From positions 1,364,001 through 1,428,000 of the forward strand of contig NC_043014.1 in NCBI RefSeq assembly GCF_006345805.1: 64,000 nucleotides of DNA. The letters run 5' to 3'. Both the position numbers and the translations under genes were made by a program. Below the pieces are notes generated by a model, which was given only the letters and a program-made list of their open reading frames with translations, ran no database searches and was not told where the DNA came from. Of this stretch, positions 33,872 through 37,471 are shown in pieces (the first letter of the stretch is position 1; each line of letters begins with the position of its first letter). This DNA comes from Octopus sinensis. Taxonomy: Eukaryota.

Positions 33872-33872
<1 letters not shown>

Positions 33873-35395
33873 CAGCATCATCATTTAGCGTCCGTTCTCC
33901 ATGCTAGCATGGGTTGGACGGTTCAACTGGGGTCTGTGAAGCTGGAAGGCTTCATCAGGCCCAGTCAGATCTGGCAGTGTTTCTACGGCTGGATGCCCTT
34001 CCTAACGCCAACCACTCCGTTGGCTTTTTACGTGCCACCCGCACAGGTGCCAGACAGAGCTGGCAAACGGCCACGAACGGATGGTGCTTTTACATGTCAC
34101 CGGCATGGGGCCAGGCGAGGCTGGCAACGGACACGAACGGATGGTACTTTTACGTACCACCAACACGGGGGCCAGACAGAGCTGGCAAATGGCCACGAAA
34201 TGGATGGTGCTTTTACGTGTCACCGGCACGGGGGCCAGGCGAGGCTGGCAACGGACACGAACGGATGGTGCTTTTACGTACCACCAACACGGGGGCCAGA
34301 CAGAGCTGGCAAACGGCCACGATACGGATGGTGCTTTTACGTGTCACCGGCACGGGGGCCAGGCCAGGCTGGCAACGGACACGAACGGATGGTGCTTTTA
34401 CATGCCAACGACACGGGGGCCAGACAGAGCTGGCAAACGGCCACGAACGTATGGTGCTTTTACGTGTCACCGGCACGGGGGCCAGACAGAGCTGGCAAAC
34501 GGCCACGAATGGATGGTGCTTTTACGTGTCACCGGCACGGGGGCCAGGCCAGGCTGGCAACGAACATGAACGGATGGTGCCACCGACACGGGGGCCAGAC
34601 AGGGCTGTCAAATGGCCACGAACGGATGGTGCTTTTACGTGTCACCTGCACGGGGGCCCTGATGTTGATCGACCTCAATTTGGTTCTGCTTTCTGATATT
34701 TGGTTTGATTTTGATTTTGACTGTTCTCACTGGTCTTGCTGGGTTTTCTCGCACAGCATACTTCCAAAGGTCTCGGTCACTGGTCATTTCCTTGGTGAGA
34801 CCTAAAGTTCGAAGGTCGTGCTTCACCACCTCGACCCAGGTTTTCCTGGGTCTACCTCTTCCACAGGTCCCCTCAACTGCCAGGGTGTGGCACTTTCGCA
34901 CACAACTATCTTCAGCCATTCTCATCACATGACCATACCAGCGCAAATGTCTCTCTTGCACACAACAACTGATGCTTCTAAGGTCCAACTTTTCTCTCAA
35001 GGTACTTACACTCTGTCGTGTATGAACACTGACGTTACACATCCATCGGAGCATATTAGCTTCATTTCTTGCGAGCTTACGCAAATCCTCAGCAGTCACA
35101 GCCCAAGTTTCACTGCCATGTAGCATGGCTGTACGTACACATGCATCATACAGTCTGCCTTTTACTTTGAGCGAGAGGCCTTTTGTCACCAGCAGGGGTA
35201 AGAGCTCTCTAAACTTTGCCCAGGCTATTCTTACTCTAGCAGTTATACTTTCAGCACACCTGCCCCCGCTACTGACTTGGTCACCTAGGTAACGGAAACT
35301 ATCAACTACTTCTAGTTTTTCTCCCTGGAAAGTGACGGAAGTTGGTCTCAGAGCATTTTCAGTGTTTATTGTTCCTGAGCATCTGCCACATCTGC
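33872..35395 (-). mobile_element. 5'-truncated RTE-type LINE with an expanded 3'-UTR tandem array
   Basis: ORF 34635..35432 gives CGRCSGTINTEN...FRYLG...LRWYGHV...RGRPRKTW, followed by the same 3' end as the 28029 copy. Confidence 0.92.
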
Positions 35396-35435
<40 letters not shown>

Positions 35436-35791
35436 AATACATACTGTTGTTAATGCCCTTTATTTACATTTGTTTTTGTGTACCATTTCTCCGTTTTCTT
35501 CCGTCCTTGTTTCTTAAAAAGCAATTAAGGGTTAGCAACAGGAGGAACATTTGGCTGTAAAATGATGCTTCTAAATACCTTGCCCAGGCCTTAACCAACA
35601 TGTGCAACAGTATGGCCGACATCAAGAACATATAACGCAGTTATACCTAGATACACACACACACAGACATCATTTACCTGCTTCCACACTCTTATCAGTC
35701 AGGTGTCCGAAGCAGAGATACAAGCCATGCAAATAACATCTGGATGCATTCTAACATACTACACACACACACACACACGCTCAATATTTAC

Positions 35792-35895
35792 CTGTTTCCA
35801 TTCATTGATACAAAATATTCTGTAAGAATCATTGCCATATTTTCCAATACCATATAATTCATCAGGATATTTCCAGTTCTTCAGACGATATTCCT
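35792..35895 (-). CDS. MBD4: MBD4 exon with the HhH motif and catalytic Asp (104 nt)
   Basis: gcttacag|AG...CAG|gtaaat. Encodes (E)[34 protein letters not shown], versus human [35 protein letters not shown]. Too short for the ORF track; found by reading the minus strand. Confidence 0.97.
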
Positions 35896-35916
35896 CTGTA
35901 AGCAAAAAGAATATAC

Positions 35917-37471
35917 AAGCTATGGACACATAAGAGGTGCAGCAATGTCAAAGGTAGGCTAACTGGGAAGATAGTTTTTGTATGTGGCAGATGCTCGGGA
36001 GCATTAACCTCCGAAAATCTGCAGAAAACAACTTCCGTCACTTTCCAGGGGGAAAAACTAGAAGTAGTTGATAGCTTCCGTTATCTAGGTGACCAAGTCA
36101 GTAGTGGGGGTGGGTGCGCTGAAAGTGTAACTGCTAGAATAAGAATAGCCTGGGCAAAGTTTAGGGAGCTCTTACCTCTGCTGGTGACTAAAGGCCTCTC
36201 GCTCAGAGTAAAAGGCAGACTGTATGATGCGTGTGTACGAACAGCCATGCTACATGGCAGCGAAACATGGGCCGTGACTGCTGAGGACATGCGTAAGCTC
36301 GTGAGGAATGAAGCCAGTATGCTCCGATGGATGTGTAATGTCAGTGTACATACTCGACAGAGCGTTAGCACCTTGAGAGAAATGTTGTACCTAAGAAGCA
36401 TCAGTTGTGGTGTGCAAGAGAGACGATTGCGCTGGTATGGTCATGTGGCGAGAATGGATGAAGATAGGTGTGTGAGAAAGTGCCAATCCCTAGCAGTTGA
36501 GGGAACCCGTGGAAGAGGTAGACCCAGGAAAACCTGGGACGAGGTGGTGAAGCACGACCTTCGAACTTTAGGCCTCACTGAGGAAATGACCAGAGACCGA
36601 GACCTTTGGAAATATTCTGTACGTGAGAAGACCAGGCAGGACAAGTGAGCCCAGCCCACTTATGAATGCCTTTCCTCCCTTGGACACAAAGACCGGTTGA
36701 GGCAAGCGAAGTCGATATAGAACCTAATCCGACGACAGACACCCATGCCAACCCCCCATGCTTGCAAAGACATGTTGGGGCAAGCGAAATCGAAATCGAA
36801 ACCGAATTGAACCAGCCAGGATCCCTGGCCTGGTGGTACGTAAAAAGCACTATCCGACTCGTGGCCGTGGCACGTAAAATACTCCAATGCGACCGTACGA
36901 CAGGCACCCATGCCAACCCCCTTTGCTTGTGAAGACATGTTGGGGCAAGCGAAATCGAAATCGAATTGAACCAGCCAGGATCCCTGGTCTGGTGGTACGT
37001 AAAAAGCACTATCCGACTCGTGGCCGTGGCACGTAAAATACTCCAATGCGACCGTACGACAGGCACCCATGCCAACCCCCTTTGCTTGTGAAGACATGTT
37101 GGGGCAAGCGAAATCGAAATCGAATTGAACCAGCCAGATCCCTGGTCTGGTGGTACGTAAAAAGCACTATCCGACTCGTGGCCGATGCCAGCACCGCCTC
37201 GACTGGCTTCCGTGCCGGTGGCACATAAAATACACCAATCTGACCGTGGCCGTTGCCAGCCCCGCCTGGCACCTGTGCAGGTGGCACGTAAAAAGCACCC
37301 ACTACACTCACGGAGTGGTTGGTGTTAGGAAGGGTATCTAGCTGTAGAAACATTGCCAGATAAGACCGGAGCCTGGTGCAGCCTTCTGGCTTCCAGATCC
37401 CCGGTCGAACCGTCCAACCCATGCTAGCATGGAGAACGGACGTTAAACGACGATGATGATGATGATGATGA
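35917..37471 (+). mobile_element. 5'-truncated RTE-type LINE, inverted relative to 33872-35395
   Basis: Starts at KLWTHKRC (35917). ORF 36184..36648 is the thumb region. The 3' end is CCATGCTAGCATGG...CGTTAAACGA(TGA)n. Confidence 0.92.

What the first reader, a model, noticed from the sequence alone, without database searches (positions are those of the whole stretch)
33872..37471. Inverted LINE pair loops out exactly the catalytic exon of MBD4
RTE copies at 33872-35395 (-) and 35917-37471 (+) face each other. They share the thumb region (about 21 differences over ~200 codons) and the 3' terminus. In the pre-mRNA they can form a duplex of at least 650 bp whose ~520-nt loop holds only the 104-nt exon with the HhH motif and catalytic Asp. 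Flanking inverted repeats are established drivers of back-splicing, exon skipping and ADAR editing, and coleoid cephalopods edit heavily. Skipping 104 nt would frameshift the last exon and leave an MBD-only, glycosylase-dead, MeCP2-like reader. That would be a TE-built switch between repair enzyme and methyl reader (inference).
Basis: partly seen in the sequence, partly recalled or inferred. Interest (0 to 1): 0.78.

Follow-up and report, generated by a model that had tools for sequence, protein, structure and literature searches.

The report
Young inverted LINE pair around MBD4 exon
Two recently inserted copies of an active jumping gene sit in opposite orientation on either side of one small exon of the DNA-repair gene MBD4 in Octopus sinensis; they could form a long RNA hairpin, but both are missing from the closest relatives, so this looks like an ordinary by-product of a repeat-rich genome rather than an evolved switch.

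Summary
The sequence observation is real. Two 5'-truncated RTE-type LINE copies (33873-35398 minus; 35918-37470 plus) flank a 104-nt MBD4 exon (35895-35792, minus strand). Their shared segment is 648 nt, 89% complementary; folding pairs them nearly end to end (1,075 bp). Skipping the exon gives ...RFS-GDTY* in the last exon.

Two corrections. The thumb ORFs differ at 30 of 216 residues, not about 21. The exon carries the HhH hairpin, but the catalytic Asp (mouse D534, octopus D550) is in the last exon.

The switch interpretation is not supported:
- O. vulgaris and O. bimaculoides have clean empty sites at both positions; Argonauta has no arm.
- The plus arm is 100% identical to at least 11 other genomic copies; the minus arm is 97-98% to its nearest. 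Sinensis-vulgaris intron divergence is about 4.4%. These are independent, post-speciation insertions.
- A 200-kb arbitrary genome sample holds two inverted pairs of at least 300 nt.
- Published O. vulgaris data show low circRNA levels. Exons of 400 nt or less circularize poorly in a human minigene system.

Most likely this is an incidental intronic dsRNA, probably ADAR-hyper-edited, with exon inclusion dominant. No RNA data could be reached. The upstream LINE lies 22 nt from the exon and may perturb splicing on its own.

The parts
35918..37470 (+). Upstream arm: 5'-truncated RTE-type LINE copy, antisense in the MBD4 pre-mRNA. It holds the thumb/C-terminal ORF remnant, a 3'UTR and an (ATG)n-type tail at 37459-37470.
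   Evidence: Clean insertion relative to O. vulgaris and O. bimaculoides. 99.4% identical over 1,552 nt to sibling copy L004, and its 648-nt core is 100% identical to at least 11 other genomic copies.
33873..35398 (-). Downstream arm: 5'-truncated RTE-type LINE copy of a different or older subfamily, sense in the pre-mRNA, flanked on both sides by (TA)n.
   Evidence: Clean insertion relative to O. vulgaris with a 44-nt (TA)n overlap. Nearest genomic siblings are 97-98% identical. 10.65% divergent from the plus arm.
35982..36629 (+). Inner stem, upstream half (RT thumb coding remnant).
   Evidence: the repeat finder I1; 598 bp paired in the MFE fold.
34744..35391 (-). Inner stem, downstream half.
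   Evidence: the repeat finder I1.
37310..37460 (+). Outer stem, upstream half (LINE 3' terminus).
   Evidence: I2/I3, 83-87% complementary. The outermost predicted pair is 37458:33873.
33871..34020 (-). Outer stem, downstream half (LINE 3' terminus).
   Evidence: I2/I3.
34026..34658 (-). 62-nt tandem array (10.4 copies) in the 3'UTR of the downstream copy.
   Evidence: TRF.
36732..37184 (+). 159-nt tandem array (2.8 copies) in the 3'UTR of the upstream copy.
   Evidence: TRF.
35399..35917 (-). Ancestral host segment between the two inserts. It is the core of the loop; the unpaired loop is 35392-35981, 590 nt.
   Evidence: Aligns at 91% to the O. vulgaris intron-exon-intron sequence.
35792..35895 (-). 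MBD4 penultimate coding exon, 104 nt, residues 511-545, holding the HhH hairpin (GIGKYG).
   Evidence: Splice sites read directly. 100% identical to O. vulgaris. Aligned to solved MBD4 glycosylase structures.
38928..39078 (-). Upstream MBD4 exon (…KAAIPLLWKFF…IIIRFS); its donor follows 38928.
33484..33558 (-). Last coding exon (VIPTD550[19 protein letters not shown]), holding the catalytic Asp equivalent.
33810..33872 (.). (TA)n microsatellite abutting the 3' end of the downstream arm, with a counterpart at 35399-35429. Probably the insertion target or TSD.
28028..29445 (-). Third LINE copy of the same family downstream of the gene, 92% complementary to the plus arm over 531 nt. It is a potential competing partner only if transcription reads through.
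   Evidence: The gene's poly(A) signals lie at 33028-32356.
40408..40588 (.). SINE copy inverted relative to SINE copies at 33606-33785 and 38156-38336. These are alternative intronic pairings that bracket other exon sets.
   Evidence: I6, I7.

Best explanation
This is an incidental arrangement specific to the O. sinensis lineage. Two independent, recent, 5'-truncated insertions of an active RTE-type LINE family, from different subfamilies and of different ages, landed head-to-head in the two introns that flank the penultimate coding exon of MBD4. Shown: the gene model, the insert boundaries, the empty ancestral sites, the youth of the copies, and the predicted duplex. Inferred: in the pre-mRNA the antisense upstream copy and the sense downstream copy can anneal into a roughly 0.65-1.1-kb imperfect dsRNA with the exon in a 590-nt loop. 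The most probable fate of that duplex is ADAR hyper-editing followed by removal with the introns. Normal inclusion of the exon probably remains the main outcome, with at most a minor fraction of skipped transcripts (514-aa truncated product) or circular ones. It is not a conserved or demonstrably selected regulatory device.
For: The inverted repeat and splice sites are read directly. The MFE folds give 598 and 1,075 inter-arm pairs. Empty sites with identical junctions occur in O. vulgaris and O. bimaculoides, and Argonauta has no arm. The plus arm is 100% identical to at least 11 other copies with 2,222 first-look candidates; the minus arm is 97-98% to its nearest siblings with 4,543 candidates. 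Sinensis-vulgaris intron divergence is 90/2033 = 4.4%, so both inserts are younger than the species split, and the arms differ from each other by 10.65%, so they are separate events from different source copies. A sibling copy has APE + RVT_1 + PHD in one roughly 1,040-aa frame, and relatives include proteins named 'craniofacial development protein 2-like'. Baseline: 18 inverted pairs of at least 120 nt within 8 kb in this window, and 23 pairs of at least 100 nt, two of at least 300 nt and one of 1,412 nt in 200 kb of arbitrary genome. The exon is 100% identical in nucleotides to O. vulgaris, and the single annotated O. sinensis protein includes it. Literature: young repeats with nearby inverted copies are the main ADAR targets across metazoans (PMC9989829). 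In O. vulgaris most editing is intronic or in 3'UTRs, editing rarely alters splice sites, and circRNAs are low (PMC9699675). Many LINE families including RTE are recently active in Octopus (PMC13282606; PMC9115989).
Against: No RNA-seq, long-read cDNA or population data for O. sinensis could be accessed, so the actual inclusion level, editing and circularization are untested. An inner stem this long and this close to a short exon is at the strong end of what I saw; it is the longest and tightest of the 18 pairs in the window. A sizeable splicing effect therefore cannot be excluded. The RefSeq model may rest partly on homology rather than on transcripts. The genome-wide baseline comes from only 200 kb, so the extrapolations are rough.
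Confidence: 0.7

Rival explanations
1. One reading: the inverted LINE pair is a functional TE-built switch. By looping out the exon it drives regulated exon skipping and/or back-splicing, producing an MBD-containing, glycosylase-dead protein that acts as a methyl-CpG reader.
For: The duplex is long and strong, and only this exon lies in the loop. Skipping gives a stop in the last exon, so the EJC-dependent NMD rule would not apply (established knowledge). Truncated human MBD4 that keeps the MBD is stable enough to act as a dominant negative (PMC2360052), and human isoforms lacking part of the catalytic domain are catalogued (PMC6651865). Inverted repeats promote circularization (PMC4201285).
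Against: Neither arm is conserved in O. vulgaris, O. bimaculoides or Argonauta. The arms are 0% and 2-3% from their siblings, so there has been little time for selection. No skipped isoform is annotated or present in the protein cluster. Octopus circRNA levels are low. Exons of 400 nt or less circularize poorly in a human minigene system, and this one is 104 nt. The product would keep about two thirds of a broken glycosylase fold rather than being a clean MBD-only protein. Such inverted pairs are common in this genome.
Confidence: 0.07
2. Any splicing change at this exon is caused mainly by the position of the upstream LINE rather than by the duplex. It inserted 22 nt upstream of the exon, moved the ancestral branch-site region 1.55 kb away, and introduced a new AG at -25. 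This would weaken or shift the 3' splice site, giving skipping or an in-frame 8-residue insertion.
For: The insert boundary is at 35917/35918 and only 'TGTATATTCTTTTTGCTTACAG' remains of the ancestral intron. The yUnAy candidates at -41 and -29 in O. vulgaris are displaced, and those now at -36 and -53 are LINE-derived. A LINE-derived AG lies at -25, 11 nt after the -36 candidate. Using it adds 24 nt in frame, encoding ACIFFLLT.
Against: The polypyrimidine tract and AG are intact, and plausible replacement branch sites exist. The annotated protein uses the normal acceptor. Branch sites in metazoans are degenerate, and an A at -17 or -19 in retained sequence might serve. There are no RNA data.
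Confidence: 0.2
3. One arm, most plausibly the plus arm because it is identical to many other copies, is an assembly or polishing artefact, or a low-frequency or heterozygous insertion of the sequenced individual, and not a property of the species.
For: The plus arm is 100% identical to at least 11 other loci. Identical high-copy repeats are where mis-joins and consensus polishing occur. Active LINE families generate polymorphic insertions (PMC9115989).
Against: Both inserts interrupt unique intron sequence at single-nucleotide-precise points, and the flanks continue collinearly with two other species. This is the signature of genuine retrotransposition, not a mis-join. The 3' tail and 5' truncation are typical of LINE insertions. 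The minus arm has private substitutions.
Confidence: 0.08

Closest known systems
Inverted Alu pairs (IRAlus) and other complementary intronic repeats flanking exons in mammals, which promote back-splicing or exon circularization and are associated with alternative exon usage
   Same: Two copies of one retroelement family lie in opposite orientation in the introns on either side of an exon. They are predicted to base-pair in the pre-mRNA and bring the exon's own splice sites, and the distal ones, together (PMC4201285).
   Different: The arms are LINE (RTE) fragments of about 1.5 kb rather than roughly 300-nt SINEs. The looped exon is only 104 nt, below the size that circularizes well in the minigene system cited. 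The arrangement is limited to one species and no RNA product has been observed.
ADAR hyper-editing substrates formed by nearby inverted young repeats (metazoan-wide; intronic and 3'UTR editing in octopus)
   Same: A long, imperfect intramolecular dsRNA from evolutionarily young repeats inside a transcribed intron, which is the substrate class described in PMC9989829 and PMC9699675.
   Different: Editing at this locus has not been observed. The exon sits in the loop, not the stem, so recoding of MBD4 by this duplex is not expected.
Truncated MBD4 proteins: the human MSI-associated frameshift product, and human isoforms 3 and 4 that lack part of the catalytic domain
   Same: The hypothetical skipped product would keep the MBD and lose glycosylase function, like the dominant-negative human truncation (PMC2360052) and the catalogued isoforms (PMC6651865).
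   Different: Those arise from a coding poly-A frameshift or alternative donor sites, not from TE-mediated looping. The octopus product is hypothetical and would retain about two thirds of the glycosylase domain.
RTE-clade LINEs of Octopus (for example RTE-2_OV; recently active RTE families in O. vulgaris)
   Same: APE + RT in a single ORF of about 1,000 aa, a simple-repeat 3' tail, frequent 5' truncation, and evidence of very recent activity (PMC9115989; PMC13282606).
   Different: I could not compare with the published RTE-2_OV sequence: it was not found in the held supplements, and PMC13282606 states that the sequences were not reported. This family has a PHD-like zinc finger between the RT palm and thumb. 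Clade placement by phylogeny was not done.

Membership tests
[quoted passage not shown] | [quoted passage not shown] | tested here: met
   The 569-aa orthologue carries PF01429. Its MBD residues map to window exons 53352-53236 and 51551-50532, matching O. sinensis-specific residues.
[quoted passage not shown] | C-terminal HhH-GPD glycosylase domain with the catalytic Asp (mouse D534) | tested here: met
   E = 9e-72 to solved MBD4 glycosylase domains over 142 residues. D550 aligns with mouse D534 / human D560, and the HhH hairpin is conserved.
RTE-clade LINE | Single ORF of about 1,000 aa with an N-terminal APE endonuclease directly followed by RT | tested here: met
   Sibling copy L004 has Exo_endo_phos starting about 38 aa after the first Met, then RVT_1, in serial ORF pieces totalling about 1,040 aa. 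Full-length relatives are 930-990 aa on roughly 3-kb contigs.
RTE-clade LINE | No ORF1 upstream of the APE-RT ORF | tested here: inconclusive
   No same-strand ORF of at least 150 aa in the 2.5 kb upstream in L004. The element's 5' boundary was not mapped because the other fetched copies are 5'-truncated.
RTE-clade LINE | 3' end is a short simple-repeat tail rather than poly(A) | tested here: met
   Both copies end in (ATG/TGA)n-type repeats at 33873-33885 and 37459-37470 with no poly(A).
RTE-clade LINE | Phylogenetic placement of the RT within the RTE clade against reference elements | not tested
   No curated TE reference set (Repbase or Dfam) is available. Indirect support only: several relatives are named 'craniofacial development protein 2-like', a name that, from my own knowledge, derives from the RTE-1/BovB-derived domain of ruminant Bcnt/Cfdp2.
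Exon-flanking inverted repeats that drive circRNA formation or exon skipping (IRAlu-type) | Complementary sequences in both flanking introns able to pair across the exon | tested here: met
   648 nt at 89% complementarity with perfect runs up to 33 bp; 598-1,075 predicted inter-arm base pairs.
Exon-flanking inverted repeats that drive circRNA formation or exon skipping (IRAlu-type) | Observed back-splice or skip junctions in RNA | not testable with these tools
   No O. sinensis transcript data are reachable. The exact-protein look-up found nothing, and the protein cluster holds only four NCBI/UniRef entries, none of them skipped.
Exon-flanking inverted repeats that drive circRNA formation or exon skipping (IRAlu-type) | Exon length compatible with efficient single-exon circularization | tested here: not met
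   The exon is 104 nt. [quoted passage not shown] That system is human, so this is a guide rather than a rule.
Evolved (selected) regulatory element | Presence at the orthologous site in related species | tested here: not met
   Both sites are empty in O. vulgaris and O. bimaculoides, and Argonauta hians has no arm.
ADAR hyper-editing substrate | Long intramolecular dsRNA within a transcribed region | tested here: met
   Both arms lie in introns of one gene and fold together.
ADAR hyper-editing substrate | Clustered A-to-G mismatches in RNA versus DNA | not testable with these tools
   No RNA reads are available.

The most novel reading that the evidence does not exclude
In O. sinensis only, the LINE pair, through the duplex and/or the insertion 22 nt upstream of the exon, lowers production of catalytically competent MBD4 and yields a 514-aa MBD-containing truncated protein with dominant-negative potential. 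That would make a very recent, natural, TE-induced hypomorph of a 5mC-deamination repair enzyme. It could shift the CpG-to-TpG mutation rate or methylation-linked regulation relative to O. vulgaris, which would serve as a ready-made arm-less control.
Probability: 0.07. Interest if true: 0.6.

Novelty: new member of a known kind. Interest (0 to 1): 0.25.

Why it matters
If the pair did alter MBD4 splicing, O. sinensis and O. vulgaris would form a natural with/without experiment on how a long exon-flanking inverted repeat behaves in an animal with very high ADAR activity. A partial loss of MBD4 could also affect CpG mutation rates. As things stand, the main value is as a clean, datable example of two independent insertions of an active RTE family, with exact empty sites in two sister taxa. 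It also shows that long inverted TE pairs around exons are expected by-products of a genome that is roughly half to two-thirds repeats; their presence alone is not evidence of regulation.

Tried and rejected
1. Pfam on the arm ORFs found nothing useful (only a sub-threshold AT-hook), because the arms hold just the RT thumb. I classified the family through a longer sibling copy instead.
2. The exact-protein look-up for O. sinensis MBD4 in Logan and other assemblies returned no record. The 90% cluster holds only four NCBI/UniRef entries, so no transcript evidence for or against skipping could be obtained. I ran no further search on the hypothetical skipped protein, because any such sequence would have fallen into that cluster.
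3. A search of the RTE-2_OV paper's supplements for peptide words from this LINE gave no hits, so identity with RTE-2_OV is untested.
5. Rfam gave no family in 33000-41000.
6. Considered and rejected: a single twin-priming or inversion event creating both arms. The arms are separated by 519 nt of ancestral host sequence in ancestral order, differ by 10.65%, have different 3'UTR tandem arrays, and have different distances to their nearest siblings.
7. Considered and rejected: the third LINE copy (28028-29445) as a major competitor. It lies about 3 kb or more beyond the likely poly(A) signals.
8. A first attempt at translating the splice outcomes used the wrong phase and was redone.
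Full report
**1. What is in the sequence**

The window is from Octopus sinensis. The assembly has 2.72 Gb in 13,516 contigs, and the window is C18:1364001-1428000. It encodes the residues T32, V114 and S382 that distinguish the O. sinensis MBD4 protein XP_029647369.1 from the O. vulgaris protein.

MBD4 runs on the minus strand. Its coding exons map at 53352-53236, 51551-50532, 40030-39809, about 39078-38928, 35895-35792 and 33558-33484; residues 1-16 were not mapped. 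The orthologue carries an MBD (PF01429), and its C-terminus matches solved MBD4 glycosylase domains at E = 9e-72.

An acceptor AG at 35897-96 follows a polypyrimidine tract. The exon is 35895-35792 (104 nt), and the donor is cag|GTaaat at 35791-90. The upstream donor follows 38928 and the last exon starts at 33558.

**2. The inverted repeat**

The repeat finder gives arms 34744-35391 and 35982-36629: 648 nt, 89% complementary, 590 nt apart. Outer arms 33871-34020 and 37310-37460 are 83-87% complementary.

In the gene-strand RNA, a 1,981-nt fold forms 598 arm-to-arm pairs, with perfect runs up to 33 bp. A 3,641-nt fold of both whole elements forms 1,075 arm-to-arm pairs, from 37458:33873 in to 35982:35391.

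The middle parts of the two elements are not collinear. One has a 62-nt array (10.4 copies, 34026-34658) and the other a 159-nt array (2.8 copies, 36732-37184).

**3. What the arms are**

The arms alone hold only the RT thumb and give no Pfam hit. A sibling copy elsewhere in the genome (L004, 99.4% identical to the plus arm over 1,552 nt) continues upstream. It runs into RVT_1 and an APE endonuclease that begins about 38 residues after the first Met. A PHD-like finger sits between the RT palm and thumb, and there is no same-strand ORF of at least 150 aa in the 2.5 kb upstream.

Relatives in the protein collection are 930-990-aa APE + RT + PHD proteins on roughly 3-kb contigs. Several are named 'craniofacial development protein 2-like'. 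From my own knowledge, that name traces to the RTE-1/BovB-derived domain of ruminant Bcnt/Cfdp2.

Both copies end in (ATG/TGA)n-type tails, not poly(A). The RTE label is therefore reasonable, though I could not place the RT in a phylogeny. The caveat matters because RTE, CR1, Dong-R4 and L1-Tx1 families are all reported as recently active in Octopus (PMC13282606).

**4. Age and origin: the key result**

I fetched the orthologous MBD4 loci of O. vulgaris, O. bimaculoides and Argonauta hians. The introns flanking the 104-nt exon compare as follows:

| Species | Upstream intron | Downstream intron |
|---|---|---|
| O. sinensis (window) | 3,032 nt | 2,233 nt |
| O. vulgaris | 1,462 nt | 682 nt |
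| O. bimaculoides | 510 nt | 1,116 nt |

None of the orthologous introns contains either arm.

The O. vulgaris sequence aligns to the window up to 37471 and resumes at 35917. It then aligns to 35399 and resumes at 33872, with a 44-nt (TA)n overlap. O. bimaculoides shows the same 37475/35917 junction. Both arms are therefore precise insertions (35918-37470 and 33873-35398) into an ancestrally empty site.

The 648-nt core of the plus arm is 100% identical to at least 11 other loci, with 2,222 first-look candidates and only 40 scored. The minus arm's nearest siblings are 97-98% identical, with 4,543 candidates. Sinensis-vulgaris intron divergence in the flanks is 90/2033 = 4.4%.

Both insertions thus postdate the split from O. 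vulgaris. Since they differ from each other by 10.65% and have different 3'UTR arrays, they are independent events from different source copies. That rules out a single twin-priming or inversion event.

**5. How unusual it is**

Within the 64-kb window it is the longest and tightest of 18 inverted pairs of at least 120 nt within 8 kb. Other pairs exist, including SINE pairs that bracket other MBD4 exon sets (33606-33785 or 38156-38336 versus 40408-40588). A third LINE copy at 28028-29445 is 92% complementary to the plus arm.

In 200 kb taken from arbitrary positions of the genome I found:
- 23 inverted pairs of at least 100 nt with loops of 5 kb or less;
- two pairs of at least 300 nt;
- one pair of 1,412 nt at 97% identity;
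- this LINE segment in 2 of the 20 loci.

It points to the order of 10^4 long, close inverted pairs genome-wide. Some exons flanked in this way are therefore expected without any selection (inference).

**6. Consequences for the protein, with a correction**

Skipping the 104-nt exon gives ...IIIRFS-GDTY*, a 514-aa product with the stop in the last exon.

The exon encodes residues 511-545, including the HhH hairpin '[15 protein letters not shown]'. The catalytic Asp is elsewhere. Mouse D534 is the catalytic residue, and K536 and Y514 were also mutated in that study; the construct ends at residue 554 (PMC3458566). That numbering fits 'PED534HK536' and 'GKY514G'. The octopus equivalent is D550 in 'IPTDHKLN', which the last exon encodes.

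'Exactly the catalytic exon' is therefore wrong in detail, although a frameshift would remove D550 as well. The hypothetical product would keep the MBD, the linker and about two thirds of a broken glycosylase fold. It would not be a clean MeCP2-like reader.

Precedents exist for MBD-retaining truncations. A human frameshift product acts as a dominant negative (PMC2360052), and human isoforms 3 and 4 lack part of the catalytic domain (PMC6651865).

**7. Most likely mechanism**

The gene model, inserts, ages and fold are shown. The following steps are inferred.
- The two arms anneal in the pre-mRNA.
- The duplex is a typical ADAR substrate. Young repeats with nearby inverted copies are the main editing targets across metazoans (PMC9989829).
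- In O. vulgaris most editing lies in introns and 3'UTRs and very rarely changes splice sites, and circRNAs are expressed at low levels (PMC9699675).

The single annotated O. sinensis protein includes the exon, and the exon is 100% identical in nucleotides to O. vulgaris. I therefore expect inclusion to dominate, with hyper-editing of the intronic stems and at most minor skipping.

**8. A rival worth testing**

The upstream LINE lies only 22 nt from the exon. Only 'TGTATATTCTTTTTGCTTACAG' of the ancestral intron remains.

The branch-site-like motifs at -41 and -29 in O. vulgaris are now 1.55 kb away. The candidates at -36 and -53 are LINE-derived, and so is a new AG at -25. Using that AG would add eight residues in frame (ACIFFLLT). 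Any splicing change could therefore come from this insertion alone, independent of the duplex.

**9. What could not be done**

No O. sinensis RNA reads, population data or raw assembly reads were reachable. The exact-protein look-up found nothing, and the protein cluster has no skipped form. The decisive tests are junction counts and A-to-G clusters in O. sinensis RNA-seq against O. vulgaris as the natural arm-less control, genotyping of both inserts, and minigenes.

**10. Verdict**

The arrangement is a new instance of a known kind, an inverted retroelement pair flanking an exon. The 'switch' reading is an untested possibility that the comparative data make unlikely. Interest is low to moderate.

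Noticed in passing
window 35896-35970 (minus strand): The upstream LINE inserted 22 nt from the exon's 5' end. The ancestral branch-site-like motifs are displaced by 1.55 kb, and the LINE supplies new yUnAy motifs at -36 and -53 and an AG at -25. Using that AG would add an in-frame 8-aa insertion (ACIFFLLT).
   Followed up: partly
window 28028-29445 (minus strand): A third, longer copy of the same LINE family (it reaches the RT 'ADD' motif region) lies about 4 kb downstream of the MBD4 stop codon. That makes three copies within 9.5 kb. It is 92% complementary to the plus arm over 531 nt, but probably lies beyond the gene's poly(A) signals (33028-32356).
   Followed up: partly
G000:C15:32310600-32317400 (L004), 2551-6491: A near-full-length sibling of the plus arm (99.4% over 1,552 nt) has APE, RVT_1 and a PHD-like zinc finger between the RT palm and thumb. 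Its ORF is interrupted by two frame breaks. Many other loci are 100% identical over the 648-nt segment, which suggests a currently or very recently active RTE-type family in O. sinensis.
   Followed up: partly
window 35365-35370 (minus strand): A single AATAAA hexamer lies inside the sense-oriented downstream LINE. Intronic polyadenylation there would give a transcript that keeps the 104-nt exon but lacks the last exon with the catalytic Asp. One hexamer alone is weak evidence.
   Followed up: no
window 33606-33785, 38156-38336, 40408-40588, also 42110-42475, 49832-50215, 54566-54880: There are many copies of a SINE-like element of about 180 nt (they give similar peptide strings, '...RLPNPLTRLWSARGYSRRHLPKVPRSGTEPGTMWLV...'). 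Some form inverted pairs that bracket other MBD4 exon sets.
   Followed up: partly
L002 (O. bimaculoides CM046620.1) and cluster 1: The O. bimaculoides MBD4 annotation appears fragmented: a 262-aa C-terminal protein (XP_014777552.1) and a separate 56-aa 'MBD domain-containing protein', against 569 aa in O. sinensis and O. vulgaris.
   Followed up: no
L001 (O. vulgaris OX597833.1) 3001-36358: The O. vulgaris MBD4 gene call spans about 33 kb, against roughly 20 kb for the mapped exons in the O. sinensis window. It contains several 3'-terminal fragments of this LINE family in other introns, so intron content has turned over heavily between sister species.
   Followed up: no
window about 11600-11800: A run of N (translated as X in the ORF at 11490-11951) marks an assembly gap or withheld stretch.
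   Followed up: no
window 17234-18200 and 21608-22450: A long minisatellite gives a repeated '...CLSILSTSTHCVCPSCQH...' reading in three frames, and there is a long trinucleotide (GTT/AAC-type) microsatellite. Both are typical low-complexity content of this genome.
   Followed up: no
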